Source: Mytilus edulis (Eukaryota). Taken from it: a stretch of DNA of 64,000 nucleotides. This document shows, piece by piece, positions 244-59,189 of this stretch (position 1 is the first letter of the stretch; the number at the start of each line of letters is the position of its first letter). The translations under genes were made by a program, and so were the position numbers. The notes below the pieces were generated by a model. It worked only from the letters and a program-made list of their open reading frames with translations, had not been told where the DNA came from and did no database searches. Location of the stretch: positions 20,894,001 to 20,958,000 of the forward strand of contig NC_092356.1 in assembly GCF_963676685.1 (NCBI RefSeq). Direction: 5' to 3'.

Positions 244-1931
244 TGTATTCACATATACTGCCGTAACGGTATGATGGAAGGTTGCAGGCGTAGTCATGCC
301 ATTTATATCCATCATCTTTGCGAATCACGGCGCAATCTTCAAATTGTCCACCTGAGAATAGAAAACCTCTGTTTACTGGTCCCTGTCCTCTCTCCCAGTT
401 ACTCCAGGTCATTTTTTGTCCTATAAAAATTTGTTTGGAGAATAATCCTTTAATGGATAGAAAACAAAATACTAGTACAGTCATTCACACAGATTTTTAT
501 AAGGTTTAAAATATAGTGAGACATAAGGATTTTTAGATAATGAAGAACATTGTAAATGTTACTATTTCATTTGCTTTAATACGAATAAACAATAGTTATG
601 TAGCTTTTCTAATATCTGCATCTAATTTTATAGAAGTATTAATCTGAAACCATACATTTTTTAGGTTTATAATGGATGCATATGCAAGTGTATTGACAAG
701 ACAATAATTACTTGTTGAATATAGCATATGTGTATTCTAAAGGACTGGCTACGAAACACAAATTCCGGTAAGAAAGTTTTTATTTAAACTTTTTTATAAA
801 TTATAACACTTGTTGTTTTATAACAGCCAAAAGCATGAGTTCTGTTATAATAAATTGTTTTTTTGTCAATTCGTAAATCTTTATAATTACAAATAATGAG
901 ATGATAAAATTCTTCTTTAGCGTTTTATTTTAAAACACATATTTGTAAATCAGATTGTCTAATGAATTCAATTGACATGACTTTATTTGAATGCACTGTA
1001 CATATAAGTGATCGAGCTTACCATTTACCCACTTCCAGTGTCCTTCCTTTTCTCTATCAGTGCCACCAATCCAGATGCTATTCTTAATCCAGCCTGATGT
1101 TTTTAAGGCATTCATGATAAATTGTTGTTTTGACATGTCTTGTATCACCACCAAGTCTCCGTGATGTTGTGTACAATATTGTCGTGCATCATTCCAGGAG
1201 TGTTCCTCACGTATCAGCTGAATACATGTATCATTGAGGGCATACAAGAATGTATCTCTTGGAATGCTCTGAGGGCACCGCTGAACATTTCCTATTGGGT
1301 AATGAATTTAAACAATGAAAAATATAAAAGTATTTTTAGTACACGATCGTCTTGCGTCATACCACGAGTGTTCGTCACGTATCAGCTGAATACATGTATC
1401 ATGGTATGCAAACAAGTAGTTATCTCTTGGAATGTTATGAGGGCATCGCAGAACATTTTCTTTTTGGAAGTTAAGAATTAAGCAAAATTATATTATATTT
1501 AAGAAAATTTATACGAGTATATGGAACGATATTAAAAAATTCACAAGTATTTTTACCTTCCTAGTCCAAATACTTATCATGATAATGACGGTCTTCAAAT
1601 GCTATTTTAAGTCGAAAGTTGTTCCAGAAATAAATGTCGCCCCAATTGAAAAGATGTTCTCTCGTTAATGTTAATGATTAGAATAGATTGATTAGAACGT
1701 ATGATAAAAAACTATTACAATTAAAATTGACTCTAAAAGTAAAACTGTAATTCGTGACCTGCCAGTACCTTAATATTTTTTGTGTACTAACTTGTAGATA
1801 GATTCGATGCAAGCTATAGATGATCTAGTAATAGTAATCTACCTACCATGCTCAAAAACCCCATCAAAAAACCATGGTTCACAAGGTTGCAAAAATAACA
1901 GCAGTATGATGAAAGTATATAATTTATCCAT
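244..1931 (-). CDS. C-type lectin gene A (5' part; continues beyond left edge)
   Basis: Exons 1931-1847 (MDKLYTFIILLLFLQPCEPWFFDGVFEH, signal peptide), 1291-1022 (GNVQRCPQ...CIQL...WNDARQYC...WIGGTD...WKWVN), 420-244 (GQKMTW...EDCAVI...WHDYAC...ICEY). All introns GT-AG, phase 1; exon sizes identical to gene B. Confidence 0.9.
1335..1459 (-). pseudogene. Relic 5' half of a diverged CTLD exon 2 inside gene A intron 1
   Basis: AG at 1461-1460 then ENVLRCPHNIPRDNYLFAYHDTCIQLIRDEHSWYDARRSCTK, homologous to exon 2, breaking off at ~1335 directly upstream of the functional exon 2. Confidence 0.85.
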
Positions 1932-4186
1932 GTTTATCAACAATAGAATTTATTTGGAAGTTTCGGTAAGTTATGTAGACAATCCGTATGCTATCAGCTA
2001 GACAAATATTACACGTAGATAGTCTAACACAGTACGATGACATATATATATATATATATATAGTTACATCTATCAACCAAAATAAAGTCATTACAACATT
2101 ATATTTACAATGAAAAGGGATCATTTGTTGGTTAACAAGCCCTTTAATATCATTTTTTTATTATCATGCCTGCTCTTATCACTATAAGGGTCTACGTAAC
2201 TTGAGTTTGGTTATTAGCTATGTCATTTACAGCGAAACGAGTTTATTAAACAATCTTTAACAAGAACACCCGAAGCTAGCACCATGAGATTTGAAATAAG
2301 GAAAATATTTTTTTATTCAGAATGAAGACAATTTTTAACAAATATGTTGTTCGGTGTGCCTTTCTGAATATGTTTTTGACATCGTTCTCTCGTATCTTCC
2401 ATTCACTCTGATGTTTAATTGAATGATTTTGGGGAATTTGATTTAATTCGTGCTTTCTCGAGAGATTAGCCTGCATGACAAATACAGTTTGTAGTCATAT
2501 TAAGAATCAGAAACGATGTAATATCTTCATCATTACCGTCAAGTATCTCACTGAAGGAAAACAAACCAGGCAATTGTAACAATGCTGAAAGAATCATTTC
2601 TGTTTCTCTTGTTTATGTCTTCTTCATCGTTCACAAAGGTTTCCGACTGGGTGTATCCCTTTTGCAGTGTATAATGGACATTGCTTGTGTCTTAATGCGT
2701 CTCTCCAGAATTGATCAAAAAAGTTATTTGCAATCCTGTGAAGCAGTGGGATAGGGAGACGCATGCGTTACACATTATTTTCATCTGACTTGCCTTAGTG
2801 ACGGGTGTGATTGCTAGGTATTGATCCATTGATGATTGTTTTCTCTTTTTAACAGTATACAACTGATTCCGTGAGGAATTTTCATTTTATTTTTGGTGTC
2901 CCTTTGATTATAGATTTGTAGAAAAAATCTCCTCTCGTGTGAAATTGAAAATGTATTTTTAATTTACTTTAATCTAAGGAGACAAAAAATACGTCCCAGC
3001 TTACATTTTTTTTTCAGTTTATATCAATCGTTTTAGTCTAGATGACTGAATAATTTATAAAACTTTATATCTCACATATATAAAAAGAAGTATACAGTAT
3101 TCATGTAGTGTAATGTTTGAATATAGTAGCAAACGAGCACAGTTTAGAATTAAATACTGGGTTACATAAAACTAGATCCTAAAAACAGCATCCATTTTCC
3201 AACAGAACTTTACAAACCGAGTTGTTAACACGTGTATCCCTCCTTAATAACGAGATGTTGTTTTTTACAAATTGTATGGACTTCTTCCTTTGAATTTGAT
3301 TAGAAGTTCCATATTTTGCTTGATACATTTATTTTTTGGTAAATGCAGTTTTCAGTTGTTACTTCCTGTATCTTTTGACATTGTTTAAGTAATTTTAGAC
3401 TTCAAAGTTGATAAATGGTATGTTTGATAATTTGAATTGGCAAAATGTTACCATAAAATACGTGACTACTGAATTTCTTTTTAAGAAAATCCTTTGGGTT
3501 CTCTAAATCTTCCAAAATGACAGGTTATTTGTTTTTAAAAAAATGTAACCCATTGGTGGCCTTTGGCTGTTGTCTGCTCTATGGTCGGGTTGTTGTCGAT
3601 TTGACACATTCCCCATTTCCTATCTCAATTTTATTTATAGTTATTGAATTTGTGTCTTTGCTTATACTATCTGACGTTAGTAATTCAACATCCACATAGC
3701 ACAAGTGCGACTGCAAAATTGTAATGAACGATCGAGTAAACAGACGTTGAAACAAAATATTATCAATCGATTCTAGCAAAAAACATATTTCCGGCAGTCT
3801 GTTTGTGCCAATTACTCTATTGCGATGTGTTGACTCTTAAGAAAGGAGTTATCAAATTTCCCAAAATATATAGTGTCAATTAAACAATCATATTAGTAAA
3901 AAAAAAAAGGCATACATGAACATAAAACATTTGTGTAAAAATATTATTTAAAGTCGTTTTTAATATATACAACAACAGCTACTGCGCTTTTACGTCATTA
4001 TTTACATACTTAAAACATATAACATAATACACAAACATATGTAAGACAAAGAAACAATAATTAATACATAAGAACGTAAAATATAAAACGAAACAAGCAT
4101 CTAAACATTAAATAACTTAGCACTCATATAAATTCAACTATTCATTTGTTTTTGCAGATCTAATTTTCATTGTTAAATTCAGATGA

Positions 4187-7100
4187 TTAAGACATGGATT
4201 CTCCATTCGCAAAATACTTCGTCGGTTCATACATATCATTTATCTGAATATCAGCACCTACGGGTGGTACTGATGCATCATCATACATGACACTATACAT
4301 AGGATTTTCTGCACCGTGTACTGTTCTGTTTGCATCATTTGAGGATAGCCTTCTCCTGTAATAGCAAATATTTATTCTATTTCAGAAATAGAAACAATTG
4401 TAACAAAAATACAGCACATATAGTTTTAATTTGACTTTTTTACGTAATGTTGTCATTTAAGCGGTATATTTAACATTGCCATAAAGCGCGGAAAATTGAC
4501 TATCCATACAACCAGGTTCAACCCAACATTTGTTCTTATAATGTCCTGCACCAAGTCATAAATGACTTTTATGGCAGTCGTTATCTAGTAGTTCGTTTCT
4601 ATGTCTGTTGCATTGTCGTTTGTTTTTTGTACCACTTCAGTGTTCTGTTGTTTCGTTTTCCTCTTATAGTTGAGGTGTTTCCCTCAGTTTTAGTTTGTAA
4701 CCCGGATTTGTTTTTTTCCTCAATCGATTTATGACTTTTGAACATCGGTATACTACTGTTGCCTTTATTTATGTCAGTACTTTTGTACTGCGTAAACATT
4801 AATTTTGCGTTTTCCATATCAAGAACATTTTAAATTTAACTCAAATCAAATTTATAAAGTAGAAGCTCATGTATTGACATTCAATCAGTAATTGGTTAAA
4901 AAACATTTACAACCTAATTTTACATGCTTTTATTATATAACATCAGTTGTAATGCCCCTGAAATATCAAGTTATATATAAGACATAATGAACTTAGTCCG
5001 GCTGAAGTAGTCTAAGAGTTAGAACAATAAACCATGAACCCTTAATCATCAATACATGATATTAACGACGATAAAACAAGACCAATTTCTTGAAAATAAC
5101 AAAAACAAATAATAGAAATAGATACCTCCTGATGACAAACACTGCCACAATGATACCTGCTACGACAACTGCCGCACAAACTCCTCCGATGATGTAACCT
5201 TAAAATACATCATTAATTATGTTATGCAATGTGAATTTATCCTAATGATTATCCTATAATTTTATCACGACTTACCATAAAAAAACATAATTCATTATTT
5301 TGTATTTCTCATGTACTCGACTTAATTAAAGTGCGCTCCAGAGTAACTGTTTTCCGGTAATAAGTTCTCGGGTACAGTATAAAAGGTAGGAATAAAAAGT
5401 TGTTATTCATAAATTTTGAACGTGTAAAGCGGCGGTTTGAAACGGAGTTTTTTCCTGCAGTGCACTTGTGCAGTACATTTTGTCGTATGTGTCCTTTAAT
5501 TGGTGAATGCACATAACCAGCTTCACATTTGGATGTGTTTAAACTTAAGGAGTAATACTTAAAAAAAAATGGCCGTGAACTTTTAAAGGTTTCAATACAT
5601 TATGAAATCAAACAACGTACAGTAATTAAAAAAAAGATTTTGATACAAGATTTTTCAGAACTAGTTGGTGGTATTGAAGGAAATGATACATCTATCCAAT
5701 TATGACAATAGCACTTTCAATTATTTGTTAGTCTGTATTTAGATGTAGGGATCAGGTGGTTTGTTGTACTTCAAAGAATATAAAGTATCTTTTTGTAACT
5801 TTATTGGGGTTTAAAAGTGTTGACCGTAGCACATTTTGTATTTTGTAAGTGCGGTGGAGCTTCTTTCTAGAAATTTTCGTGTGTGATTTAAAATATAAAC
5901 AAGTTACCTGTACTTGACTTGTTTGTTGGTTTATTTCCATTGTCACCTGTAATATTATTGAAAACAGATGAATAACAATCACTTCGCAAATAGTTTTTAA
6001 CCGTCGAATACTTTTGTCAGTTTTAAAATGTACAAATGCAGAAGTCTTTGTGAGTGTTTTTGTTTCTATCTTTCTATCTTTCAAGAACATAATCAATACA
6101 CCAAAAAAAAATAAAAACTAACCGACTAAATAGGAGTAATTTGTTTTTACCATACACGTAAATGTGCACAATTCACGTCAAAATAGTGAGAGAAACAAAA
6201 TCCTATTGAGTAATATTTGGATATTTTGTTTTTTCTATGTTTATAATGGTTCTTACTGCGTCTTAAGAGGCCGCCTTGATTATTGACTAGCTGTGTAGGT
6301 AGTGGATTTTCTGGGCTAGTCGTCGTTTCCTTTATTTCTTGAGTAGTTGTGGGAGCAGCTTTCGTCACTTTCATTGTTGGAATAGGTGTCGAAAACAAAG
6401 TTGACTTAGCTTTCGTTGTTCGCAATATTTGCGTTTTTAATGGCGTTCGTGAGGTCGTTACCAAGTTAATGGTTTGAGCAGGTGGTTTTGTTGACTTAGT
6501 AGTTGGTATTGTTGTCGTCGATATTTGAGTAGTTGGTACAGGTGTTGTTGATTTCTGAGTAGTTGCCAATGTTGTTGCCAATGGTTGAGTAGTTGGCAAT
6601 TTTGATGTCGGTATTTGAGTACTTAGTACAGGTTTTGTCGATGAACGAGTAGTTGGTGCAGGTTTTGTCGTTGTCTGAGTAGTTGGTTCAGGTGTTGTCG
6701 ATGACTGAGTCGTTGGTGCAGGTGTTGTCGTTGACTTAGTAGTTGGTGCAGGTGTTGTCGATGACTGAGTCGTTGGTGCAGGTGTTGTTGATGACTGAGT
6801 AGTTGGTGCAGGTGTGGTCGATGTCTGAGTCGTTGGTGCAGGTGTTGTCGTTGACTGAGTAGTTGGTGCAGGTGTGGTCGATGTCTGAGTCGTTGGTGCA
6901 GGTGTTGTCGTTGACTGAGTCGTTGGTGCAGGTGTTGTCGATGACTGAGTAGTTGGTGCAGGTGTTGTCGTTGACTGAGTCATTGGTGCAGGTGTTGTCG
7001 ATGACTGAGTAGTTGGTGCAGGTGTTGTCGTTGACTGACTCATTGGTGAGGGTGTTGTTGATGACTGAGTCGTTGGTGCAGGTGTGGTCGATGTTTGAGT

Positions 7101-10044
7101 AGTTGGTCTATGAGTTGTGGTTGGTATAAAATCTGTTAAATAAATAAAAATAACTTCAATTGATATAAAAGTTGTAGCACAAATAGTTTTGTGTAAACAA
7201 AATTCGTTGTCTCTGTAAATACTCAAATAATTATCCTCAAATGTGAATATATGCTTCATGTGTTTCATTAAAAAATACATAACTGCTACTGCCCACAAAC
7301 AAAAGCTATGATTAGTATGATGTAAGTTTACGTAACGAAGATGCAACTGTATAAAGAAATATTTGGCAAATTATGTGTTTTATTTAAGATTCTCTTTTAC
7401 AAATAAAATCCTTGTTGCACTCTGTGTAGGAGTAAGCAAATATTTTAGAATATATCAAATTTTCAAGGAAGAATCAAACAACTGATCTGCATTGTAGTAT
7501 ATCACAAATTACTACCATTTCTTAAAAAGGATTACGTTATTTTGAGTAAGAAGGGAACAACATCAGTCAATAACAGGCTAAGATCTATTATGTGAATAGT
7601 GTTAAGACTACAGTAACAAATATTATGCTTAAGGTGGTATGGATGTCTTTCACCGTCTTGGATTGTAAAAGACAGAGAATCTAAGGTCTAGAATTTCAAT
7701 CAATTTAGCAAAATTTGATGCAGAAATGCAGATAATTAATGTGAGTTTGCATTTTAAAGAACAAATTTATAAGATTATAACTTATAAATATTAATATTTG
7801 TACAAGTGTTGATTAGTTCTGCTTGAACTTTAAAATTTTTAAATTGGCATTTTAAGGGGAGGTAACTCTGAAAAAGTGCATTTTCTGAAGGAATCTACAT
7901 GGCTATTTCGTATTTTAGCTAAACAAAAAAGCACGGTGACCCTATCTTTTTTTTATGATATTCTCAAAGCATTTTAAAAAAGCTATCTTCTCGTATTTTA
8001 TTTTACAATTTTATCATTTAGTTTAGCTTCTAATCAAATAATGGTGATATTTCATGTATAATCCATCCAAATGTGTCATTTTATCACGACCTATAGCTTG
8101 AGAAAATGCACGGTGACCTATCAATTTTATGATATTTTTTAACATCTATCAATAGATACTACGTTTTGGCAAAGTATGAACTAATTCTGTCATTTTTAAT
8201 TTAGACTCCCATACCATACCACCTTAAGTAAAAGATTATACTTACTGTATTCGCATATACTGCCGAAATGGTATGATGGAAGGTTGCAAGCGTAGTCATG
8301 CCATTTATATCCATCATCTCTGCGAATCACAGTGCAATCTTCCCACCGTCCACTAGAGAAAAGAAACCCACTGTTTCCTGGTCCTTGTCCTTTTTCCCAG
8401 TTGCCCCATGTCATTTTTTGTCCTATAGTTTTAAACACACATTTTTAATAAACCACCAACAGATATAGGCGTTTTCACTGATTTTCAAAAAATTTTACAT
8501 AAATTTATTCAAATTTCATACGAGACATTAATTTTACTATTTTATTTTCTTTAATTGTAGTAAACAAACATATGTATATTTTGAATCCTAGAATTGTATG
8601 GATTAAAAATATCTTTAAACTTTTTAGCAGTATTATGTTTGCGCTGTAACTTTTTTTTGCAAGACTTAAAAAAAGAAAAGGTGTGTATCAGCAATCATTA
8701 TGTCTTAAACACGTTCGAAAAAAGTGCCACTGGCTTTTTTTTGAAAGATGTATGCCCCTTTTGTAAGCACCTATGTACATTTTGTAAAACTATCATAAAA
8801 TATATATACATTTTGTAAAAGGTTACCCGTATGTTAGCAATGTCTTGGTGATTTCTAAAATCAGCGCTCAACTATTATTTTTACAGGCGTTATGTCACTT
8901 TGAAAGATAAATTAGATTGAACTTTGCACTATAAGCAGCCTCACACCTATATTTCTTGTCATAGTTTTATGAAGTGTATGCCGAAGTCTTTCAAAAAGGT
9001 TTACAAAACTGTGATACAAGTTGAATTATATTGAAAATTGCCTTATCAACGATCTCATGCATTAAATTATAATATCTTGTGATTGTGTCTTTCGCTGAAG
9101 TTAATTGGATCTGGGTTTTTTGTTATGCTTTTTTTAACATTTACTCGATAATTGTTAATTATAGATATGTAAAATAACGAATATGGAAAAAAATCTTCTT
9201 CGGAGTTTTCTTTTATTACACGATTTTACCATATGGATATTTTACATTGATTTATTTGGTATCCAACATACCATTAACCCACTTCCAGTGTCCTTCCCTT
9301 TCTCTATCAGTGCCACCAATCCAGATGCCGTTTTTAACCCAGCCAGATGTTTTTAAGGCATTCATGATATATTGTTGCTTTGCCATGTCTTGTATCACCA
9401 CCAAGTCTCCGTGATGTTTTGTACAATAGCGTCTTGCATCATTCCAGGAGTGTTCCTCACGTATCAGCTGAATACATGTATCATTGAGGGCATACAAGAA
9501 GTTATCTCTTGGAATGCTCTGAGGGCACCGCTGAACATTTCCTATTGGGTAATGAATTTAAACAATGAAAAATATCAAAGTATTGTTGTACATGTATCTG
9601 CATTGTAATAAAATGTGTACAGATTATCTATTTTAATTCAATTGATCATATTCTGTTTTTCTCTCTCAGCCAAATGTTTTTTTCATATTTAAGAATTTTT
9701 ATTTGATGCAAATACAAAATGTTAATGAAGTACATACTAAGTAATTGATTGTTTATGACAGGAATGACCATTCTCAGCTTAAATCTTAAAATATCAGGTC
9801 ACATTTCACACAAAAACATGTACTCATATGAGAAAAATCATGGTTTTTTAAAATATGAGACATCAGTGCATGTATTTCATTAGCAGTGCACAAAAACCTT
9901 TGCAAGTCAACTGCTCGTACCTCACACCGTAGACCACAGATTACTTATAATTTACTTACCATGATCTAAAACCCCGTCAAAAAACCATGGTTCACAATAG
10001 GACAAAAGTGTCACAAATATAATAAAAGTAAGTAATCTATCCAT
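4187..10044 (-). CDS. C-type lectin gene B: type I membrane CTLD-mucin receptor (~562 aa)
   Basis: Exons 10044-9960 (signal MDRLLTFIIFVTLLSYCEP), 9541-9272 and 8422-8246 (CTLD), 7132-6257 (PTS mucin), 5946-5908 (39-nt linker), 5198-5126 (TM GYIIGGVCAAVVVAGIIVAVFVIRR), 4355-4187 (tail with NPMY, stop TAA). GT-AG throughout; total 1689 nt, in frame. Confidence 0.85.
6540..7110 (-). repeat. 30-bp coding tandem repeat (PAPTTQS[S/T]TT) forming mucin stalk of gene B
   Basis: 30-nt period visible, e.g. ggtgttgtcgttgactgagtagttggtgca; roughly 19 units, degenerate towards the 3' end of the gene. Confidence 0.95.
7633..8223. mobile_element. Non-autonomous DNA transposon/MITE, TTAA TSD (Kolobok-like)
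   Basis: TTAA|GGTGGTATGG ... CCATACCACC|TTAA; inserted about 20 nt from the gene B exon 3 donor. Confidence 0.75.
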
Positions 10045-30600: not shown

Positions 30601-30841
30601 TATTGGCTTGAACAATACAAAAATAATGAGGTTGTTATGTTCTTATCTTATTTATCGGATTTACATGATTTCTCTTTTAAATTGAGTTTTCGCTGATTAG
30701 GCTATCTTTTTTCCCTGTTTTTATTTAAGTCATTTAATATTTCTATGTTCCTAAATATATCCAAAAAAATAAATACATACCGGCACTGTAAACTGCTTGC
30801 TGTACGAAACCAAACAGAAAAAACACAAAAACTAGAATCAT
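24672..30841 (-). CDS. C-type lectin gene D: secreted CTLD + ETPAP mucin tail (~323 aa)
   Basis: Exons 30841-30781 (MILVFVFFLFGFVQQAVYSA), 28438-28172 (DLSHCPSR...SCIL...WTDGRANC...WIGATD...WRWID), 26637-26446 (GQGNNHNSGFLFANGGNEDC...WHDYPC...ACEF), 25123-24672 (ends AIIGRRRRR*). Phase-1 GT-AG. Confidence 0.87.
26215..26380 (+). mobile_element. Penelope-like RT fragment
   Basis: NFSFLYSNIPAAPEYGVCISQMIRYSRACISYHDFLDRG motif; related fragments at 53690-53880 (+) and 59550-59670 (-). Confidence 0.7.
26834..26882 (+). ncRNA. Type I hammerhead ribozyme (retrozyme fragment ~26711-26918)
   Basis: GCGTCA-CTGATGA-GTCT(tatcatatgt)AGAC-GAAA-CGCGCG-TC^TGACGT: core CUGAUGA/GAAA, stem I GCGUCA/UGACGU, cleavage after GUC at 26876. 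Confidence 0.85.
29635..29850. mobile_element. MITE with ~35-bp TIR
   Basis: tagggctcttcacggttagttcggccatattggata ... tatccaatatggccggactaaccgtgaagagcccta. Confidence 0.85.
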
Positions 30842-45300: not shown

Positions 45301-48020
45301 CATTGTCAAATTGTTCCCTATTGTAGTTTTATTCAGCAATCAGCAAGACTTTCTAAGATAACTAATATAGGACAATGCTGTTAATTAAAAAATTACTCCA
45401 TTCCTGGATAGCCAGGACCTTTTGTTTTCCAAATAATTAATATTTCCAATAACTGATAAGTTCCAGGTCGACGGGTTCAAACAGAAAGATTTGAAAGCAG
45501 AGAAAAATGTGTATCTTAATTATAATCGACATGACTTATCAGATGACAATACCAATTACTAAAATAAGGCTTAGGCATAGTTATATACTTTAATTCAGTC
45601 ACGGACCCGCGATATCACGGGTGTGTACTTGTATCCTTAAGATAAGTCCCTGCACGATTTGCAATGTTTGCAGTTTGTTATTATCAGTACAAGGAAACTT
45701 TATGAAAATAAATTTAAGTATGCATATGTTCTAATCACCCAATGAAATAGATTGGTTTAACAAACTAGAAATATCAACTTATTTTTTTGTTAGAAGCAAA
45801 GGAATATTTTGCATAAAGGTAATATAACAAGCAAGCATGTTTAACACGACATGTACCACATGTGGAGCAGGATCTTCTTACCCTTACGGAGCAAATGAGA
45901 TTACCCCTAATTTTCTGGGGTTCTTGTTGCTTACTAGTCTTTATTTTTCTATGTTGTGTCTTGTGTACTATTAGTTGTCTGTTTGTCTTTTACTTTTTTT
46001 AGCAATGTCGTTGTCAGTTTATTTTCTATTTATGAGTTTGAATGTCCCTCTGGTAACTTTCACCCCTCTTTTTGAACAAAACATATGAAACTAATACCAT
46101 CTATCCACCGCCAGTCCCCTTCCTTTGCCCTGTCTGTTAAACCAATCCACACATTTGCTGCATTCCAATGCTCCAATCTTAAGGAATCCAAAATGAATTT
46201 TTCTTTTCCACTATCTTTCACCGTTACTAAATCTCCTCCAAGGCTCCTGCAGCTTTTGCGAGCATCATCCCATGACAATTCATGTTCGACAAACAACAAG
46301 CATGCATCTGTATACACGCGCACGTGTTTCAAAGTCCTAATTCGTGTTGGACATGCTGATAAATCTACAGAAAAAAAGCGTCAAAGAATTTTATAATATT
46401 ATAAGAAAACTTCAAAACTTAATGTTTACAGCATTCATTTAATGGGGCTTCGCATGATTTGCATAACATGACAAAACCTTTTTTCGCATAAAATAATAGC
46501 AAAACTTCTTATAGTGTCAAAATAATAATGATACGAGCGTTCGTAAACAATTCAATTTGAAAGAACTGCCATAACAAAAACCTACTAGTATTGTCGTAAA
46601 AACACATTGTTTTCCTTTAATACATGTAGGTAGGAGGTCGACCAAACTCTAATGAGATTCGATCAAATCGATTATGATGATTACGAAATTAGAAATTCAA
46701 CACGATAGAAGCAAACAATCATAATTGATTTGTATACTACATGTATCAATGCAGTGATTCAAAATGTGTGGACTACAATTATATTAATTAGTCCCCGTTT
46801 ACTCCATCATTTTCTTCTTAAAACGCATGTAGTTGTTGGTAATTCATTTGATGTGTTTGAGCGTTTGAATTTAAATATATAAGGTACATAATGCAGAGAT
46901 TTAATATTTTATAATTGTTGGTATTTAGTATAAAGACAGTATTTAACTATTAAAATGACATGTTGGACTTAAAGTGCAAGTGATATTTCTATTTGACTAG
47001 GGACGTTCGGTTTTGAATTGTCATCGGAGTTTAGTTTTACAGTGCGTATTGATACATGTATATGTTTTTCTTTATTCTACATTAGACAGAGGTATAAGGA
47101 GAGGGTTGAGATCTCACAAAACATGTTTACCCGCCGCATTTTTGCTCCTGTCCCAAGTCATGAGCCTCTCGACTTTGTTAGTCTTGTAGGTTTTATTTAA
47201 TTTTAGTTCATTTATATGTTTTAGATAAAATTGAGAATAGAAATGGGGAATATGTCAAAGAGACAACAATTCGACCAAAGAGCAGATAACAACAGAAGGC
47301 CACCAATGGGTCTTCAATGCAGCGAGAAACTCCGCATCCGGTGTCGTGCTTCAGCTGGAGTTTAGTATGACGTCCATTTTAACTGAACTATAGTACACAT
47401 TGGTACAATGTATATGTGGGCGAGCTGAGGACCACCTCCGGGTGCGGGAGTCGAAGACCCATATTGATGACCTTCAGCTGTTAACTGCTCTTGTCGGGTT
47501 GTCGTTTCTCTGACATATTCCCCATTTTATTTCTCTATTTTATTTATAGCTCTTTAACTGTTTAGCTTCTTATTCATCATTGACCTTGACAATATTATGT
47601 GTAAAGCAGCACTGTTTATTTTAATCCAGTAAAGTGTTTCAAATGCAAACAGTTTTTGAAGGGTCGTTTTAATTTTTATAAATAATATATCATGGCAAAT
47701 AAACATTATATATATATTTTATATGAAAAAAATATTATTAAGAAATTAATTGAAAGCTTGAGCGTTTGTATGGTTTTTTTTTCGGAATTATTAATATGAT
47801 CATAATTATTACTTTTAAACATACATTGAATTGTACATGTGGACAACGTTTTTGAAATTGAAGGAATAAGAATAATTTGTAATAAAACGCAAGCAACGAA
47901 TTAGGGGTAAAGAAGAAAAAAAAATGTTCAAATTAGGGAAATACAAAAAATGTTACCTGATTGGCAGAAGACTGGATTACAAAGGCCAAGTACAATGGTC
48001 AAAACTATGAACAACGACAT
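42346..48020 (-). CDS. C-type lectin gene F: secreted CTLD + ETPAP mucin tail (~313 aa)
   Basis: Exons 48020-47957 (MSLFIVLTIVLGLCNPVFCQS), 46364-46098, 43594-43403 (GQGNNHNTGFLFAGGSNEDC...WHDYPC...ACEF), 42764-42346 (ends VIIGKKRRL*). Phase-1 GT-AG. Confidence 0.88.
44972..45631 (+). mobile_element. Non-autonomous Helitron-like element
   Basis: A|TCTATAATACTAAA 5' end; 3' hairpin acccgcgatatcacgggt followed by CTTG|T (CTAG variant). Confidence 0.6.
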
Positions 48021-51300: not shown

Positions 51301-51598
51301 TTAATATACATGTAATGAAAATCCTTGAGACTGATAAGTACCGTTGTACGTCATACTACATGTATAGTGACCTTCGTCATACTTTGTTACGAAACTTAAA
51401 TACAGGTTGTATTCTCCTAGTGCATGATCACCAACAACAGCAATAGTCGATAGCCTTGGATTGGTTACTGTGTGCCACTAGCGTATAATGTTCTGGAATC
51501 TGGTGGCCCATACCATTCAATAATTCCATCAACACGTGTAATTGGACAACTAAATGTTACATTCCTTCCTGTTTTTACAAGTTTTGTCAGTATAAAGA
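51301..51598 (-). pseudogene. Immunoglobulin (V/I-set-like) domain exon with 1-nt deletion
   Basis: VFILTKLVKTGRNVTFSCPITRVDGIIEWYGPPDSRTLYASGT/fs/VTNPRLSTIAVVGDHALGEYNLYLSFVTKYDEGHYTCSMTYNGTYQSQGFSLHVY*: B-strand Cys, C-strand Trp, YNL, DxGxYxC. The exon is one base short of being in frame. Confidence 0.85.
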
Positions 51599-53689
51599 CT
51601 ACAAAACAATACACGAAGTTTTGTGTGAAAAAGTCATTAATACAGTTATTAAAATAGCTAATATCTTCGTTTTTTTCAATGACTTGAATTGCCTCCCATT
51701 GTACGCAATTGACAACTAATAGTGTTTGGCGAAAGGGGCTTTATTATAATAATGCATTCAAATATTTCATTGAATCAATAAGCTACAATGAACAAAGTGT
51801 CAATATAAAGCACCTAAACCCAAACGAAGTCGTCAAACAGGAAACAAAAAAGAAGGGAAACATATGTGTAATAATGACCCTGTCCACTAGGATGCTACTT
51901 ATAAAAGCTTCACCACATCAATCAGAAAGTACTGAAAACCGACAATCATGAAATTCAATGCGCAAAATACAGATCGACATTGAACATAATAATAATTTCG
52001 TAAACCAAGCCAACTTGAAGGACAAATATCTAATACTAAAAATGCATCAACAACATAAAAATTCATGTGTAATTCATGTAATTATTATCTTTGACAACAG
52101 TGTCAAAATCAGTGCTACATGATGCATAATAAGGCATTCAATGAATATGGATCATTTCAGTCATAAAGAGACACCCTTGTAAATACAGGGGAGACTTGCA
52201 TTACACAATCATAGGCATTAATGATCACAATTAAACACAACTACTACTAGGTGAACTTAATTCGCTTATAAATGCAAGGAACAAAAAAATAATATATAAC
52301 TCGCTTATCGCTTATATTTTCTCCCTTTTATTTGTACTGTAGTCCTGTCATGTTATGTTGTCATTTAAATGTTATAATTAACATTGCCATTAAAGCGGGA
52401 GGTTAGGCAAGCCACACAACCAGGTTCAACCCACCATTTTTTTCTTAAAATGCCCTGTACCAAGTCAGCAAAATGGTCATTTATATATAGTCGTTTCTGT
52501 GTGTGTTGCATTTTAATTCTGTGTTTCCGTAGTTCTCTTATATTTGATACGTTTCATTCAGTTTTAGTTTGTAACTCGGCTTTGTATTTTCTCTATCGAT
52601 TTAGGTGAATTTTGAACAGGGTATAGTACTGTTGCCTTTATTGAAAATATAAAATCACTTCGAAAAATGCAAAAAAAAATGTAATTTTTATGATTATAAT
52701 CTTAATCAAGTTTGTTGTAAATAAAAAAGAAACGATGCTTATGATATGTATTTAGGTCAGATAACGAACTTGAAATGTTGAAGGTATTTGACTGCGCAAT
52801 CTAAGACTTAAATGTTTTCGTAAACTTCCTAATACATAAACTTCATATGCTCTTCTAGCTCTATAACTGTACCTTTAGCTGTTGTCGACTGTGTTGATAC
52901 TGTTGTGGTAGTAGTATTATAAGGATTGGTGTTTTGTGGAATGAATGTAGTAGTTGATCCTACTTGTACAAGCTTATCAGTCCTGGCTAAAACAAGAAGA
53001 AAATGACTACAAATTAAATTCTGTTTAATAAATTCATGCTTTCCGAGAAAATAACAGCTCTTACAACAATGCACGCGCATTGCAGTCAATAGTGTCCCGC
53101 GGAATTAATGTATAAATACGTCCGACTGGGGACTTTTTACTAATTTGGAATAGATAAGGAATAGGCATGACTTTTAGTATACAATAGGAAGGTATAGTGC
53201 GCTGTTAGATTATATTTCTTAGAACATCATCATGGACATACTTGAAAAAAGTAATACTAAAACACATGATCATACAAAACTATCATAGTTATACTCTCTT
53301 ACAATTGAGGAACACATTGATTAGAGGTCAACCTACTTTTTGACCCCTATGTTTGACGCCGTTTGCTTCTAATCGACATTAAAAGAGAGCTTCTGATTTA
53401 ATAAGATATGTGGTGTCCGTCATTTTATCTTCACATACTGTTATAAAAAAAAAATGGAGTTGTATGCGATTGTCTTACAAGTAAAATGTTCATTCACCAA
53501 TTTTCTACCCAAGGAAATGTCTGTACCAAGTAAGGACCATTGTTTTTTACATACTTAAATGATGTCCTTTAACTAAATAATTCATAGGGTGGTGATAAAA
53601 CTTAACACAATAAAGCTACAGTTTAGCCTACCTTTTGCTTCTTGAATTACATTTCGAAAATGAAGGGGGATTGGTTGAGATCAAATCTT

Positions 53690-56271: not shown

Positions 56272-57353
56272 TCAAACTATTATTTTACTAGCAATATATA
56301 CTTACGAAATTCACAGGCATAAGTGTAATGATATCCCATGTTCCCTACGATTGGATGACATGGATAATCATGCCATAGGCCCCCATCACTACGTCTTATC
56401 AGTGCGCAGTCTTCGTTTGAACCACCAGCAAACAAAAATCCTGTGTCGTGGTTATTACCTTGTCCGTTCGCAAAATGTCTGTATGTTACTTGACTCCCTG
56501 AAAGTAATGTATTCTGTTAAGAAATAAGGTTATACGGTACGTAAATTAATTTAATCAATTAGTATGTTTTTAGCTTGATAAAGTCATCGCCTTGCGTTAA
56601 ACGAGGCGAACAAAATATATACGGTGATTCAAACACAATCAGTGACAAAAAAGAGAATCGTACCGCCTTGAAGGTAAATATATCTAGAAAGGTAGTACAG
56701 AATGAAGTTATCAATAAACTTTTTTCAAAAATAAATGATGCACTGATGCAATAGTTCTATTGGCTAACCGATGAACGGACCATGAAGATCATAAGTATTG
56801 GGTCCTCTCATTATCAATTTTACAACGTCTCAATAGATACCCCCTAGTAGTTTCACAGAACAATAAGATTTTAAAATCAAAGAATGTCTCTGTCCAGTCA
56901 TGTTTGTAATCATGATGTGTTGAATAACTCCCATGCTTTGAGTTTGTAAAGTATGATTGGAATGGTTGAGTTTGATTCATAGAAAAATGCGAAACATGAT
57001 TTCAATAGGTATTCAATATTTCTTTTATTTGGAGCTATCTGTCAACAATACTGCTGATATTTCGCAGACAAAACAAAAAGTGATGATCGTGATTGTGTAG
57101 ATGATTGCCAATCAACAATTCCATTAATTTCACTCGACTGAAACAAAATGAGGAATGTTATAACGCAACTATAAACACTTGTCGTTTAATTTGAAGCTTT
57201 TGCTACTAGTTGATATAATGCCAGCTTTAACCCACCATTTTCTTTGGAAAAGGCCACTACAGGGCAGTATTAAACATGGTAGTTCTTGTCCATGTGTTCC
57301 GTTCATTGATGAAGTAAAGCGTTTGGTTTTGTCAGATTTTATGAACTTTTCCC

Positions 57354-57530: not shown

Positions 57531-57756
57531 GCCAATTATTGTGTAAATATTTGACTTTAATTTGATTTGACGTAGCTTGAGTTTCTTGTGGCTTTGTCAT
57601 ATCATTTAAATCACCAGAGGTAACAAAACATCGCCTTTGTAGAAGTTATTGGAGCAAGTTAAAATAATTCTATTTTTCTTTTATTTTCAGTTACAGCAAA
57701 TGTATCCAATAACAAACAAACATGAAAGACCACTTTTCTTGACAAATACAAAATAC

Positions 57757-57846
57757 CGTCTATCCACCGCCAGTCCCCTTCTTTTGGCCTTGTCTGTAGC
57801 TCCAATCCATAAGTTTTGTGCATTCTGGCAATGTTCAAAGGTTAAA
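57757..57846 (-). pseudogene. Relic 3' part of the original gene G exon 2
   Basis: LTFEHCQNAQNLWIGATDKAK(+1)EGDWRWID|GT; diverged from the upstream F-like copy and frameshifted. Confidence 0.8.
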
Positions 57847-59189
57847 CATTGTTGTCTCTTTAACATGTTCCCCATTTCCATTTTCTATTTTATTGAACAA
57901 AACATAATACTACATGTACAAATGTAATACTACATTTTCTATTTTATTGAACAAAACATAATACTACATGTAATACCGTCTATCCACCGCCAGTCCCCTT
58001 CCTTTGCCCTGTCTGTTGCACCAATCCACACATTTGCTGCATTCCAATGCTCCAATCTTAAGGAATCCAAAATGAATTTTTCTTTTGCACTATCTTTCAC
58101 CGTGACCAAATCCCCACCTAGGCTCCTGCAGCTTTTGCGAGCATCATCCCATGACAATTCATGTTCGACAAACAACAAGCATGCATCTGTATACACGCGC
58201 ACGTGTTTCAAAGTCCTAATTCGTGAGACCAAAAAAATATCATAGACATCTTAATGTATATGTTTGGCAATAAAGACCTACCATGCTTGATGTACATATA
58301 GGAATTAAAATATTTCGCATAACAGGACGAAATAAGCTCCACTAAATGATGAACATTTATCCATAGATCCAATTTTTATTCAAATCTCCTCCATAGAAAG
58401 TTTTAAAATGCAGCAAATGATGATTGGTTGATTGTCTAATCAGACGCTGACATATCACATGATTTGATAAAAGGTGTCCTACTGAAAGTCTTTCCTCATC
58501 TGGTTTGTTTATATAAAGATATTCAATAAAAAATCTCAATAACTTAAGAATATTCTTCTTTCTCCCTTTTTTTTTTGTTGTCATAATTTACCTTTAGCTA
58601 CAGCGACTCTAAAAGTTAATTCAATGTATCTAAGAAAAAATGAAAAAGTCGATCGTGTATGTCAATGAGTATGAAACATGTGATATATCGGACACTAAAT
58701 GCAGCAAATGCTAGTATGTGTATTGCTGTACAGTTGTGTTCCTGCTTCTGGTCCATATTTATATGTTTTCATTAAACAAGATCATCATGCATTCATGTGA
58801 CTGTTCCAAGTTTGGAATTTCTTTAACATGTATGTCATATGTTTTGTTTTGTTTATTGTTTTACTGGATAAATCATGTGGTTGGTTTTCTGGTGTGAATT
58901 AATGAAATGTTTGCAACGTAGGGGGATCAAATAAATCGCAGTACCGTATGTATTCTGCATACTGTTGAAGCACATACGGTGTCCTGTATACTAAACACCA
59001 AAAGAAACGCACCACCTCCAATCAGATATTTAATTTCTTTAAAATGAACAATTAAAAAGAGTTAAAAATCGATATTCCAACAGAATAAAACAATTTAACT
59101 AAGTTAGTTAATTAGGGCAATACTTTTATTTTAAAGACATTTTTTATTGGATCCAATCAAATGAAGATAAAGAAGCGAACGATACGAAA

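What the first reader, a model, noticed from the sequence alone, without database searches (positions are those of the whole stretch)
244..58225. Modular lectin locus: one atypical CTLD head, three interchangeable tails
Seen in sequence: seven paralogs share the CTLD exons, and A-F also have a signal exon. The introns joining head and tail modules are phase 1. After exon 3 they splice to different modules: mucin-TM-Tyr tail (B), ETPAP mucin + Ile-Gly-basic end (C-F), or Thr linker + Ig domain (G). Inference: an exon-shuffled recognition system with a membrane receptor plus a panel of secreted, stalked counterparts. It may act in mucosal particle sorting or immunity. Phase compatibility among same-strand genes D-G would also allow inter-gene chimeric splicing.
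Basis: partly seen in the sequence, partly recalled or inferred. Interest (0 to 1): 0.8.

Follow-up and report, generated by a model that had tools for sequence, protein, structure and literature searches.

The report
Mussel lectin genes with swapped tails
Seven neighbouring blue-mussel C-type lectin genes share one unusual lectin head but carry three kinds of tail (membrane anchor, secreted mucin stalk, immunoglobulin domain); the genes are real and at least three are already annotated, so this is a clear case of exon shuffling, not a new kind of system.

Summary
The window is Mytilus edulis, contig C13, 20.894-20.958 Mb. [quoted passage not shown] A-F also have a signal-peptide exon. After CTLD exon 3 a phase-1 intron leads to different 3' modules.

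- **B:** Thr/Pro mucin, 39-nt mini exon, transmembrane exon, NPxY tail. This matches RefSeq XP_071145870.1 exactly.
- **C-F:** ETPAP-repeat mucin ending in Ile-Gly with or without a basic run. F matches a RefSeq protein exactly.
- **G:** Thr linker plus an Ig-like exon.

Spliced contigs from three studies join exon 3 to the linker and the linker to the Ig exon. They also lack 2 nt that break the Ig frame in this assembly. The head tree and the tail types disagree (C), conversion between exons is uneven (F/G), partial exon copies exist, and database proteins are mosaics. Together these support DNA-level module exchange.

The head defines a small subfamily seen only in lophotrochozoans (140 of 1.84 billion representatives). 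Both the membrane and the Ile-Gly-ended forms predate this locus. Function (mucosal sorting, immunity) and inter-gene chimeric splicing are untested. G has no signal exon and a 5'-truncated head in this haplotype. Interest is moderate.

The parts
1847..1931 (-). Gene A signal-peptide exon (ends in phase 1)
   Evidence: ATG, hydrophobic core, G|gtaggt donor. 73% DNA identity to B's exon region.
1022..1291 (-). Gene A CTLD exon 2 (270 nt, phase 1-1)
   Evidence: Pfam Lectin_C E 2.4e-13.
244..420 (-). Gene A CTLD exon 3 (177 nt, phase 1-1). The tail lies left of the window.
   Evidence: Mucin exon found in L001.
1332..1484 (-). Partial duplicate of the 5' part of exon 2, upstream of A's exon 2
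   Evidence: tblastn 45% over 51 aa, E 1.5e-11. 84% DNA identity to B 9414-9549.
9960..10044 (-). Gene B signal-peptide exon
   Evidence: Exact match to RefSeq protein P0008 residues 1-29.
9272..9541 (-). Gene B CTLD exon 2
   Evidence: Exact match to P0008 30-119..
8246..8422 (-). Gene B CTLD exon 3
   Evidence: Exact match to P0008 120-177..
6257..7132 (-). Gene B Thr/Pro/Ser mucin exon (876 nt, phase 1-1) with 30/60-nt tandem repeats
   Evidence: Exact match to P0008 179-470. TRF 60-nt unit, 10.5 copies.
5908..5946 (-).
   Evidence: Exact match to P0008 471-483..
5126..5198 (-). Gene B transmembrane exon (phase 1 to 2)
   Evidence: Exact match to P0008 484-507..
4187..4355 (-). Gene B cytoplasmic exon with NPMY and NDMY motifs, and stop codon
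   Evidence: Exact match to P0008 508-562. NxxY count.
16314..16383 (+). Gene C predicted signal-peptide exon
   Evidence: Prediction only: ATG, hydrophobic core, G|gtaagc donor.
16803..17072 (+). Gene C CTLD exon 2
   Evidence: Pfam Lectin_C E 6.4e-12.
18185..18364 (+). Gene C CTLD exon 3
19779..20113 (+). Gene C tail: ETPAP-repeat mucin ending Val-Val-Ile-Gly-stop
   Evidence: Phase-1 acceptor. The same exon 3-to-tail junction is in database protein P0047. TRF 33/66-nt repeats.
30781..30841 (-). Gene D signal-peptide exon
   Evidence: Partly exact match to M. trossulus RefSeq P0151.
28172..28438 (-). Gene D CTLD exon 2
26446..26637 (-). Gene D CTLD exon 3
24672..25123 (-). Gene D tail: ETPAP mucin ending Ile-Ile-Gly-Arg5-stop
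   Evidence: Phase-1 acceptor. The junction is the same as in P0151. 69-nt repeat, 3.7 copies.
37433..37496 (-). Gene E signal-peptide exon
   Evidence: 90% identity to the N-terminus of M. trossulus P0154. G|gtaaca donor.
34122..34388 (-). Gene E CTLD exon 2
32591..32785 (-). Gene E CTLD exon 3
   Evidence: Exact match to P0147 80-143..
32052..32344 (-). Gene E tail: Thr-rich/ETPAP mucin ending Ile-Ile-Gly-KKRRL-stop
   Evidence: Exact match to P0147 145-240..
47957..48020 (-). Gene F signal-peptide exon
   Evidence: Exact match to RefSeq-source protein P0146 1-21.
46098..46364 (-). Gene F CTLD exon 2
   Evidence: Exact match to P0146 22-111.
43403..43594 (-). Gene F CTLD exon 3
   Evidence: Exact match to P0146 112-174.
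42346..42764 (-). Gene F tail: ETPAP mucin ending Ile-Ile-Gly-KKRRL-stop
   Evidence: Exact match to P0146 176-313. 36/72-nt and 21-nt repeats.
58732..58756 (-). Gene G first coding exon as annotated (no signal peptide)
   Evidence: Exact match to P0152 1-8. Weak donor T|gtacag.
57977..58249 (-). Gene G CTLD exon 2, 5'-truncated (lacks the Asp-Leu-Ser-x-Cys-Pro start)
   Evidence: Homology to F starts at 58225.
57752..57845 (-). Partial duplicate of the 3' end of exon 2, inside G intron 2
   Evidence: 84% identity to E and 79% to F.
56306..56497 (-). Gene G CTLD exon 3
   Evidence: Exact match to P0152 101-163. RNA contigs reach it.
52873..52986 (-). Gene G Thr-rich linker exon (114 nt, phase 1-1)
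   Evidence: Joints 52986|56308 and 51597|52873 in contigs of X1, X2 and X4. P0152.
51301..51598 (-). Gene G Ig-like exon, terminal. Two extra nt at 51469-51470 break the frame in this assembly.
   Evidence: The 2 nt are absent from contigs of 3 runs (table 4). Ig matches in Pfam and PDB.

Best explanation
**What it is**
The locus is a tandem array of seven paralogous genes in Mytilus edulis. [quoted passage not shown]

**The head**
- It is encoded by two symmetric phase 1-1 exons.
- It keeps the CTLD cysteine framework and the WIGxTD core.
- It has Gly-Gln-Gly-(Asn/Pro) where canonical lectins have EPN/QPD, and WHD for WND. Classical Ca2+-dependent sugar binding is therefore doubtful. This last step is inference.

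**The tails**
Behind the head, a phase-1 intron joins one of three 3' modules.
1. **B:** a long O-glycosylatable Thr/Pro stalk, a transmembrane helix and a short cytoplasmic tail with NPxY/YxxΦ motifs. This makes a type I surface receptor, most likely endocytic or phagocytic (function inferred).
2. **C-F:** a shorter ETPAP-repeat stalk ending in a conserved Ile-Ile-Gly followed by a stop or a basic run. These are secreted, stalked lectins (inferred).
3. **G:** a Thr linker plus one V/I-type Ig-like domain. This makes a soluble two-domain protein.

**How it arose**
The array arose by tandem duplication. Later, unequal recombination and gene conversion inside the phase-compatible introns exchanged heads and tails at the DNA level. 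It remains polymorphic and mosaic among Mytilus individuals and species.

**Shown versus inferred**
- Shown: exon anatomy, splice junctions (B, F, G, and by orthologues or alleles C, D, E), transcription of the exon 3-linker-Ig form, family distribution, head/tail incongruence.
- Inferred: secretion, glycosylation, endocytic signalling, ligand, any cooperation between members.
For: **Anatomy and splice junctions**
- Seven head pairs are present.
- All splice sites are AG/GT, with phase 1-1 symmetric exons.
- Exact residue-for-residue mapping of P0008 (XP_071145870.1, M. edulis), P0146 and P0152, all from the window's own 75,045,669-bp contig.
- The E, D and C junctions appear in P0147, P0151 and P0047.

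**Transcripts of G**
- Contigs of X1, X2 and X4 (3 studies) join 56308|52986 and 52873|51597.
- X1's contig runs on to 51262, past the stop codon.
- All three lack 2 nt at 51469, which restores the Ig frame as in the M. galloprovincialis protein P0145.

**Domain identity**
- Head: Pfam Lectin_C E 1e-16 to 2e-18 on full proteins. Exon 3 alone gave 0 of 4 Pfam hits.
- The exon-3 profile finds only 140 of 1,835,955,588 representatives. It finds 7 strong copies in the genome, plus 3 on a duplicate contig.
- Ig: sub-threshold hits to five Ig families. All 60 PDB matches listed (of 146 at E <= 1) are Ig-superfamily domains, best SYG-1 at E 1e-3. There are 42 Ig-like exon matches in the genome.

**Module exchange**
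- Exon-2 tree: ((A,B)100/100,C)89/85 and (D,(E,(F,G)))100/98.
- C's tail is 68-75% DNA-identical to the D and F tails, while C's head gives no blastn hit to the D or F heads.
- F-G exon 2 is 94% identical and exon 3 is 86%.
- Mosaic proteins P0004, P0006 and P0148.

**Tail motifs**
- NxxY is present in 27 of 30 TM members, against 10.7 expected.
- An Ile-Gly-type end occurs in 18 of 173 stored proteins, from 5 Mytilus species and 2 oyster genera.
Against: - No tissue, ligand or protein-level data could be reached.
- X24, the only raw-read RNA run laid, gave almost no depth on G's exons: 44 reads, 43 only partly fitting, mostly on a repeat at 55450-55649.
- X1, X2 and X4 are 'RNA?' by guess. 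Their RNA nature rests on the intron-skipping joints themselves.
- The contigs carry only 25-30 nt of exon 3. That stretch is conserved among E, F and G, so which head is attached to the Ig tail in those animals is unknown.
- In this haplotype G has no signal exon, a truncated exon 2 and a frameshifted Ig exon. The reference copy may be a null allele.
- C's signal exon is a prediction only. P0047 reads through C's stop codon.
- The C+(A,B) branch has 89/85 support, not starred, on 91 columns.
- Tail similarity lies in repeats, which can inflate identity.
- Three ab initio models (P0145, P0149, P0118) splice the Ig exon onward into the next head.
Confidence: 0.75

Rival explanations
1. The seven genes form one coordinated recognition system. 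Phase-compatible introns are also used at the RNA level, so that read-through transcripts splice a head of one gene to the tail of a downstream gene and give combinatorial products.
For: - All head-to-tail introns are phase 1, and D-G lie head-to-tail on one strand.
- The M. galloprovincialis RefSeq 'isoform X2' (P0004) has an F-type exon 2 (75 residues exact), an F/G-type exon 3 and an E-type tail (74 residues exact).
- Ab initio models P0145, P0149 and P0118 run from the Ig exon into the next head, using a phase-1 GT at about 51343.
Against: - No inter-gene joint was seen. X1's contig reads through the internal donor and past the stop.
- The X1 loose end at 56307 carries an E-type tail. It is explained by an E-like transcript aligning to the conserved 3' end of exon 3, so it is not evidence for a chimera.
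- P0004 could equally come from a deletion or conversion allele.
- Ab initio models often fuse tandem genes (my knowledge).
Confidence: 0.15
2. Gene G is a decaying partial duplicate. The linker and Ig exons belong to another unit, either a remnant Ig gene or 5' exons of gene F (Ig-to-CTLD order, as in snail CREPs). On this reading there are only two real tail classes.
For: - In the reference G lacks a signal exon and the first ~20 nt of exon 2.
- It carries a pseudo-exon fragment.
- Its Ig exon has a 2-nt excess.
- M. coruscus model P0149 reads Ig, then CTLD, then mucin.
Against: - Three runs from three studies hold contigs joining exon 3 to the linker to the Ig exon. They have an intact Ig frame and continue into the 3' UTR.
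- RefSeq models G the same way.
- F has its own signal exon, used in RefSeq P0146.
- The linker exon is phase 1-1 and fits the exon-3 donor.
Confidence: 0.1
3. There was no exchange of modules. This is an ordinary tandem array whose C-terminal low-complexity regions diverged in place. The likeness between C and D-F tails is retained ancestry or convergence of repeats, and A/B and G each replaced their tail once.
For: - Both tail types are old. Oysters have Ile-Gly ends; scallops, gastropods and Lingula have TM+NxxY. An ancestral Ile-Gly tail with later changes is therefore possible.
- Introns share almost no similarity, so the events are old.
- The tails are tandem repeats.
Against: - This still needs at least two tail replacements on the head tree, which are themselves exon-shuffling events.
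- F-G exon 2 at 94% against exon 3 at 86%, together with partial exon copies, shows ongoing non-reciprocal exchange.
- Mosaics P0006 (D head, C-type end) and P0148 (E/F mosaic) exist in other genomes.
Confidence: 0.15

Closest known systems
Expanded bivalve C-type lectin repertoires and 'CTLD-containing proteins' with extra domains (Saco et al. 2023, PMC10140915; passages and section 2.2 read)
   Same: - CTLD genes in Mytilus, some with signal peptide or TM.
- Lineage-specific architectures, including immunoglobulin domains.
- Some subfamilies conserved across molluscs.
   Different: - In the parts of that paper I read, this locus, its phase-1 exon plan, the Ile-Gly end and the NxxY tail are not described.
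They may place these genes in a lettered subfamily and give tissue expression.
Vertebrate CTLD group 14 (thrombomodulin, CD93, CLEC14A, CD248) (PMC6852297; search listing and start of abstract only)
   Same: Type I membrane glycoproteins with an N-terminal CTLD, a mucin-like stalk, a TM helix and a short cytoplasmic tail, as in gene B.
   Different: Group 14 proteins carry EGF (and sushi) domains, from my recollection and that abstract. Pfam finds only Lectin_C in P0008. No orthology was shown.
Ig + CTLD immune lectins: Biomphalaria CREPs and crayfish PcLec3 (PMC4944128 and others; search listing and abstract starts only)
   Same: One Ig-like domain combined with one CTLD in a secreted invertebrate protein.
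   Different: There the Ig domain is N-terminal to the CTLD. In gene G the order is CTLD, linker, Ig, as the spliced contigs show.
Layilin / chondrolectin (recalled, not tested)
   Same: Type I membrane proteins with a single N-terminal CTLD and a cytoplasmic tail that binds PTB-like domains through Asn-x-x-Tyr-like motifs.
   Different: All 25 named family representatives I looked up are lophotrochozoan.
NPxY endocytic/phagocytic receptors (LDLR, CED-1/Draper class) (recalled)
   Same: A short cytoplasmic tail with NPxY plus YxxΦ, as in B (NPMY, YSVM).
   Different: The ectodomains are unrelated. The motif's function in B is inferred only.

Membership tests
C-type lectin-like domain (Pfam PF00059) | Profile match above the curated cut-off | tested here: met
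   Exon 2 alone scored 46.6-51.7 bits against a cut-off of 22.6, in 4 of 4 tested. Full proteins P0146, P0008 and P0152 scored 61.7-67.7 bits.
C-type lectin-like domain (Pfam PF00059) | Long-form cysteine framework (six Cys) and WIGxTD core | tested here: met
   Invariant columns are C22, C39 and W73-I74-G75-x-T77-D78 in exon 2, and C31, C47 and C62 in exon 3. The first Cys (Cys-Pro) is present in 6 of 7 and absent in G.
Ca2+-dependent carbohydrate-binding C-type lectins | EPN or QPD triplet and WND motif at Ca2+ site 2 | tested here: not met
   All seven have Gly-Gln-Gly followed by Asn or Pro, and all have Trp-His-Asp. Assigning these positions to EPN and WND rests on my recollection of the CTLD consensus and on the Pfam register.
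Immunoglobulin superfamily domain | Profile match above the curated cut-off | tested here: inconclusive
   Ig_3, ig, Ig_2, V-set and I-set all match in the same register but below their cut-offs. The best scores are 21.3 against 30 bits, and 20.3 against 21.8.
Immunoglobulin superfamily domain | Cys...Trp...Tyr-x-Cys pattern and likeness to solved Ig domains | tested here: met
   The pattern Phe-Ser-Cys, Trp-Tyr, and Gly-His-Tyr-Thr-Cys was read. All 60 PDB matches listed are Ig-superfamily domains (SYG-1, neurotrimin, DIP, Kirrel, SIRP, antibody V).
Mucin-like (PTS) stalk | Tandem repeats rich in Thr/Ser/Pro | tested here: met
   TRF arrays lie inside the tail exons of B, C, D, E and F. S+T+P is 41% of P0008. 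O-glycosylation itself cannot be tested here.
Type I membrane receptor | Signal peptide, one TM helix, cytoplasmic tail | tested here: met
   B has a hydrophobic N-terminus, a 24-residue TM exon and a 57-residue tail. This rests on sequence inspection and a simple hydrophobicity rule, not on a dedicated predictor.
CTLD group 14 (CD93/thrombomodulin) | EGF-like repeats between CTLD and mucin stalk | tested here: not met
   Pfam finds no EGF or sushi domain in P0008 at E <= 0.1.
CREP (Ig-CTLD lectins of snails) | IgSF domain(s) N-terminal to the CTLD | tested here: not met
   The spliced contigs place the Ig exon 3' of the CTLD exon and the linker.
Layilin/chondrolectin | Orthology of CTLD and cytoplasmic talin-binding motif | not tested

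The most novel reading that the evidence does not exclude
The invariant C-terminal hydrophobic-Ile-Gly, followed by nothing or by 1-6 basic residues, is a processing signal: convertase or carboxypeptidase trimming followed by Gly-directed alpha-amidation. The secreted stalked lectins would then end in an amidated Ile.

The motif is kept in Mytilus C-F, in a distant M. edulis paralogue, and in two oyster genera, even though the stalks in front of it vary freely.

This would be a neuropeptide-type modification on ~200-390-residue mucin-like lectins. It could govern their sorting, half-life or anchoring in mucus.

An alternative of similar novelty is that the motif is the stump of the transmembrane exon. 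B reads Ile-Ile-Gly, then the hydrophobic core, then Arg4-Leu. E and F read Ile-Ile-Gly-Lys-Lys-Arg-Arg-Leu. That would record how a receptor was turned into secreted decoys.
Probability: 0.25. Interest if true: 0.6.

Novelty: new variant of a known kind. Interest (0 to 1): 0.4.

Why it matters
Bivalves have very large C-type lectin repertoires, and how that diversity is generated is mostly unknown. This locus shows within 58 kb a complete, transcript-supported example of exon shuffling among extracellular modules joined by phase-1 introns. One head is paired with a receptor tail, secreted stalks and an Ig domain, and heads and tails are recombined differently in other individuals and species.

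It also defines a small, uncharacterised, lophotrochozoan-wide CTLD subfamily with two conserved tail signatures: a cytoplasmic NxxY motif and a C-terminal Ile-Gly(+basic) end. Both can be tested directly.

The result is useful for annotation as well. G's Ig frame is intact in transcripts but broken in the assembly, and contig C1037 is an unpolished duplicate. It is not a new class of system.

Tried and rejected
**1. Locus of the M. galloprovincialis isoform.** I tried look-up of encoding contigs for P0004 to see its locus.

**2. TM or cytoplasmic exon for gene A.** I searched 18.5 kb left of the window with tblastn using B's tail and with two hydrophobicity scans. Nothing was found. A may end after its mucin exon, or continue further away.

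**3. Contig C1037 as a second haplotype.** It is 99.5% identical to window 8896-37913. Of 132 differences, 119 are 1-nt indels. It is an unpolished duplicate and says nothing about presence/absence variation.

**4. X1 loose end at 56307.** It carries an E-type tail on a 'G' exon 3 and first looked like a chimera. I rejected this because the last ~30 nt of exon 3 encode the same residues in E, F and G, so an E-like transcript would align there.

**5. X24 raw RNA reads.** They gave almost no depth on G's exons. That means no evidence for expression in that sample. It is not evidence of absence, since only 19% of the run was read.

**7. Literature.** I made three searches and read one paper in part. 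I found no description of this locus, of the Ile-Gly end, or of a CTLD-then-Ig order in bivalves. These searches are narrow, and supplements were closed.

Full report
**Where the window comes from**

The window is G000:C13:20894001-20958000 of a 1.37-Gb assembly. Protein P0008, which its gene B encodes exactly, is XP_071145870.1 'mucin-2-like [Mytilus edulis]', on a contig of 75,045,669 bp. That is the length of C13. GC is 29-38% and there are no N.

**Checking the observation**

tblastn with exon translations taken from the window finds seven exon-2 copies and seven exon-3 copies, in pairs and in gene order. With A's exons as queries, E runs from 7e-70 to 1e-19 for exon 2 and from 3e-75 to 6e-14 for exon 3. 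There are also two partial exon-2 copies, at 1484-1332 and 57845-57752.

I read every boundary base by base.
- All exons are flanked by AG and GT.
- Exon 2 is 267-273 nt and exon 3 is 177-195 nt.
- B's mucin exon is 876 nt, B's mini exon 39 nt and G's linker exon 114 nt.
- All these lengths are multiples of 3, and all these exons start and end in phase 1.
- Signal exons end in phase 1.
- The terminal tail exons of C, D, E and F have length mod 3 = 2, as expected for a phase-1 start through a stop codon.
- G's Ig exon has mod 3 = 1, which is 2 nt too many.

The uniform phases are weaker evidence than they look. The heads are paralogs, so their phases are inherited. A tail acceptor must match the donor in any working gene. 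What is informative is that the internal modules are symmetric 1-1 exons. From my knowledge of Patthy's work, that is the class typical of shuffled extracellular modules.

**Independent support for the splice junctions**

Full-length comparisons used database proteins that the tools returned.
- **B, F and G:** three proteins from the window's own contig map exon by exon without a mismatch.
  - P0146 (F) has 4 exons.
  - P0152 (G) has 5 exons and ends at the frameshift stop.
- **E:** exon 3 and the tail are exact in P0147, from an older M. edulis assembly.
- **D:** the signal exon, head and tail start match the M. trossulus RefSeq protein P0151.
- **C:** the exon 3-to-tail junction (Cys-Glu-Tyr, Lys, Met-Pro-Lys-Met-Leu-Thr) is in P0047, a protein of unnamed source.
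- **Signal exons:** E's signal exon (37496-37433) was found through the M. trossulus protein P0154. C's signal exon is a prediction only.
- **A:** the tail lies outside the window. In the 10 kb to the left there is a 271-codon open Thr/Ser/Pro-rich stretch with a phase-1 acceptor and a phase-1 donor. It is 35% identical to B's mucin. No TM or cytoplasmic exon was found within 18.5 kb.

**RNA evidence for the least certain tail (G)**

- Logan contigs of X1, X2 and X4, from three studies of the organism that also supplies the best DNA holders, skip 51598-52872 and 52987-56307. These are exactly the two predicted introns.
- One 479-nt contig (X1) carries 25 nt of exon 3, the whole linker exon, and the Ig exon down to 51262, which is beyond the stop codon.
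- The three runs are labelled RNA only by guess, but precise intron removal shows they are cDNA.
- All three contigs lack 2 nt at 51469. That removes the stop at 51467-51465 and gives ...Ala-Ser-Gly-Thr-Val-Thr-Asn-Pro-Arg-Leu..., the reading found in the M. galloprovincialis protein P0145.
- The frameshift is therefore a rare allele or an assembly error. The assembly does contain an indel-ridden duplicate contig.

There are limits to this evidence.
- The exon-3 part of the contigs is short and conserved among E, F and G, so the head attached in those animals is not identified.
- Another X1 contig has an exon-2 end that reads like E's, not G's (table 7, compared).
- The raw-read RNA run X24 gave almost nothing on the exons.

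**What the modules are: the head**

- Exon 2 matches Pfam Lectin_C positions 2-60 of 107, in 4 of 4 tested.
- Exon 3 alone matches nothing at E <= 0.01, in 0 of 4. Whole proteins match to position 98-102 at E 1e-16 to 2e-18.
- The alignments show the six-Cys long-form framework and WIGxTD.
- They also show Gly-Gln-Gly-(Asn/Pro) and Trp-His-Asp where I recall EPN/QPD and WND. The head is thus a true but atypical CTLD.
- PDB relatives are generic CTLDs of the mannose-receptor family.

**What the modules are: the tails**

- **B:** 292 codons of Thr/Pro/Ser repeats (60-nt unit, 10.5 copies), a 13-residue spacer, a TM helix and a 57-residue tail with NPMY, YSVM and NDMY.
- **C-F:** the tails hold 33-72-nt repeats encoding ...Asn-Val-Glu-Thr-Pro-Ala-Pro-Thr-Thr.... 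They end in Val-Val-Ile-Gly-stop (C), Ile-Ile-Gly-Arg5-stop (D) or Ile-Ile-Gly-Lys-Lys-Arg-Arg-Leu-stop (E, F).
- **G's Ig exon:**
  - It matches five Pfam Ig families in one register, all below their cut-offs.
  - All 60 PDB hits listed, of 146 at E <= 1, are Ig-superfamily domains. The best is SYG-1 D1 at E 1e-3.
  - It has 42 matches to Ig-like single exons across the genome. Only the window's own copy is above 40% identity, and it is split into two frames.

**Family and distribution**

A profile of the seven exon-3 peptides finds 16 places in the genome at E <= 1e-5.
- Seven are in the window (E 1e-36 to 1e-29).
- Three are on duplicate contig C1037.
- Six are weaker (E 4e-11 to 7e-7), on C13 near 46.65 and 49.5 Mb and on C9.

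Against 1,835,955,588 representatives the same profile finds 140 proteins at E <= 1e-3, 51 at <= 1e-10 and 4 at <= 1e-30. I used this large search because Pfam left exon 3 open.

I looked up 30 of the 140. Twenty-five carry names and all are lophotrochozoan:
- 17 bivalve entries (Mytilus spp., Mizuhopecten, Ylistrum, Pecten, Crassostrea, Saccostrea, Ostrea, Pinctada, Potamilus, Mercenaria);
- 6 gastropods;
- Lingula;
- the annelid Owenia.

Five are unnamed transcript assemblies. The names given are generic ('uncharacterized', 'mucin-2-like', 'lithostathine-1-like', 'perlucin-like', 'brevican', 'mannose receptor-like').

Of the 73 representatives of at least 190 residues, 30 have a TM segment by my rule. 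Twenty-seven of those 30 have Asn-x-x-Tyr in the cytoplasmic part, against 10.7 expected from shuffles.

An Ile-Gly-type end occurs in 18 of the 173 proteins stored. They come from five Mytilus species, Crassostrea virginica and Saccostrea cucullata. They include a distant M. edulis paralogue on the same chromosome (XP_071146545.1...Ala-Thr-Ile-Ile-Gly-Lys). Both tail types are therefore much older than this locus.

**Evidence for exchange of modules**

1. The exon-2 tree gives (A,B) 100/100, with C as sister at 89/85, and (D,(E,(F,G))) at 100/98 (33 rows, 91 columns, LG+G4; exon 3 not included). C also shares the A/B-type deletions in exon 3.
2. C's tail is nevertheless the ETPAP type. It is 68-75% DNA-identical to the D and F tails, whereas C's head gives no blastn match to the D or F heads. 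At protein level C's tail is 57-62% identical to D- and F-type tails.
3. F and G are 94% identical over exon 2 but 86% over exon 3. The homology starts only at 58225, inside G's exon 2. This is a conversion tract or a partial duplication.
4. Partial exon-2 copies lie beside A and inside G.
5. Proteins from other genomes are mosaics of this window's modules.
   - P0004 (M. galloprovincialis RefSeq isoform X2) has an F-type exon 2, an F/G-type exon 3 and an E-type tail.
   - P0006 (M. trossulus RefSeq) has a D head, a D-type tail start and a C-type end.
   - P0148 (M. edulis, other assembly) is an E/F mosaic in both head and tail.
   - P0145 (M. galloprovincialis) has an E-like head followed by the linker and Ig.

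Introns share almost nothing, so most events are old. On the head tree at least two TM/Ile-Gly changes plus the Ig gain are needed.

**How it most likely works**

- **B** is a type I surface protein that holds an atypical CTLD about 300 residues out on a stiff, probably O-glycosylated stalk. It couples to PTB or AP-2 adaptors through NPxY/YxxΦ. That would make it an endocytic or phagocytic receptor. This is inferred from motifs conserved in 27 of 30 TM relatives.
- **C-F** are secreted versions of the same kind of head on shorter stalks. They could work as soluble binders, opsonins or mucus components. That is inference only.
- **G** adds an Ig-like domain, giving a bivalent soluble adaptor.
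- The ligand is unknown. Loss of the EPN/WND residues argues against classical Ca2+-sugar binding.
- Whether the members cooperate is unknown.

**The conserved C-terminus**

The stalks vary in length and repeat number between orthologues, yet the last residues do not vary (one search list). Gly followed by a stop or by a basic run is what an amidation signal looks like (my knowledge). A different reading comes from B, which reads Ile-Ile-Gly, then 18 hydrophobic residues, then Arg-Arg-Arg-Arg-Leu. With the core removed, that is nearly the E/F ending. The Ile-Gly end may therefore be a stump of the TM exon. P0047 reads through C's stop, which weakens a strict rule. Neither reading was testable here.

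**Comparison with what is known**

- Saco et al. 2023 (PMC10140915; passages and section 2.2 read) describe the expansion of bivalve CTLs, subfamilies conserved across molluscs, and bivalve-specific CTLD proteins with added domains including immunoglobulins. I saw nothing on this locus in those parts. The supplements were closed and may hold subfamily labels and expression for the M. galloprovincialis orthologues.
- Vertebrate group-14 CTLD proteins share B's overall layout but have EGF domains (PMC6852297, listing only). B has none.
- Ig+CTLD lectins are known in snails (CREPs) and crayfish (PcLec3; PMC4944128, abstract start), in the opposite order.
- Layilin and chondrolectin are recalled analogues that were not tested.

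**Verdict**

At least B, F and G are already annotated, as uncharacterised or generically named proteins. The novelty lies in three things: the locus-level picture, the CTLD-then-Ig order with transcript support, and the two conserved tail signatures of an uncharacterised lophotrochozoan CTLD subfamily. The case is moderately interesting.

Noticed in passing
window 61162-63156 (-): An uninterrupted 664-codon ORF with a hydrophobic N-terminal segment. It matches glycoside hydrolase family 31 (PF01055 E 8e-28, PF21365 E 7e-18). It looks like an intronless gene just upstream of lectin gene G.
   Followed up: partly
window 50736-50779 (-); related ORF-like repeats at 48758-48877, 50727-50834 and about 51100-51230: A type I hammerhead ribozyme match just at Rfam's gathering score (34.5 against 34 bits). 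It sits in a short repeat that recurs near G's 3' end and between F and G. This fits the retrozyme noted as s1-832545.
   Followed up: partly
window 51469-51470: Two nucleotides present in the assembly are absent from the contigs of all three runs that cover the place (table 4). Two of those runs also show a 3-nt in-frame insertion behind 51419. This is either an assembly error or a null allele of G's Ig exon.
   Followed up: yes
G000 contig C1037 (L004-L006), equal to window 8896-37913: A 29,025-bp contig that is 99.5% identical and collinear to the window. Of its 132 differences, 119 are single-base indels, several inside exons. It is an unpolished duplicate, not a second haplotype, and it inflates copy counts.
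   Followed up: yes
window 55450-55649 and 56050-56249 (G intron 3): Very high summed contig depth (up to 410 and 1024 in X2), with many loose ends on both sides. The raw RNA reads of X24 land almost only at 55450-55649. These look like expressed repeats. ORF fragments at 54506-55020 (-) look to me like the end of a non-LTR retrotransposon ORF. That is recalled likeness and was not tested.
   Followed up: no
window 36540-37364: A 37-nt tandem array of 21.6 copies (78% matches) in E's first intron, just downstream of E's signal exon.
   Followed up: no
database protein P0051 (unnamed source): A C-type head (84% identical to C's exon 2) preceded by about 145 residues that look like a signal anchor plus a coiled-coil neck, with no tail after the CTLD. 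This is a possible fourth, N-terminal module for this head family.
   Followed up: no
database protein P0047 (unnamed source), compared with window 20111-20113: In this close relative of gene C the stop codon after the Ile/Thr-Gly end is read as Trp, and the protein continues for 24 residues. Those residues match the window's in-frame sequence after the stop.
   Followed up: partly
L001 about 9300-8490 (-), left of the window: Gene A's mucin exon ends at a phase-1 GT donor. If the donor is not used, the frame stops two codons later, giving ...Lys-Val-Gly-Lys-stop. That is another Gly-plus-basic end.
   Followed up: partly
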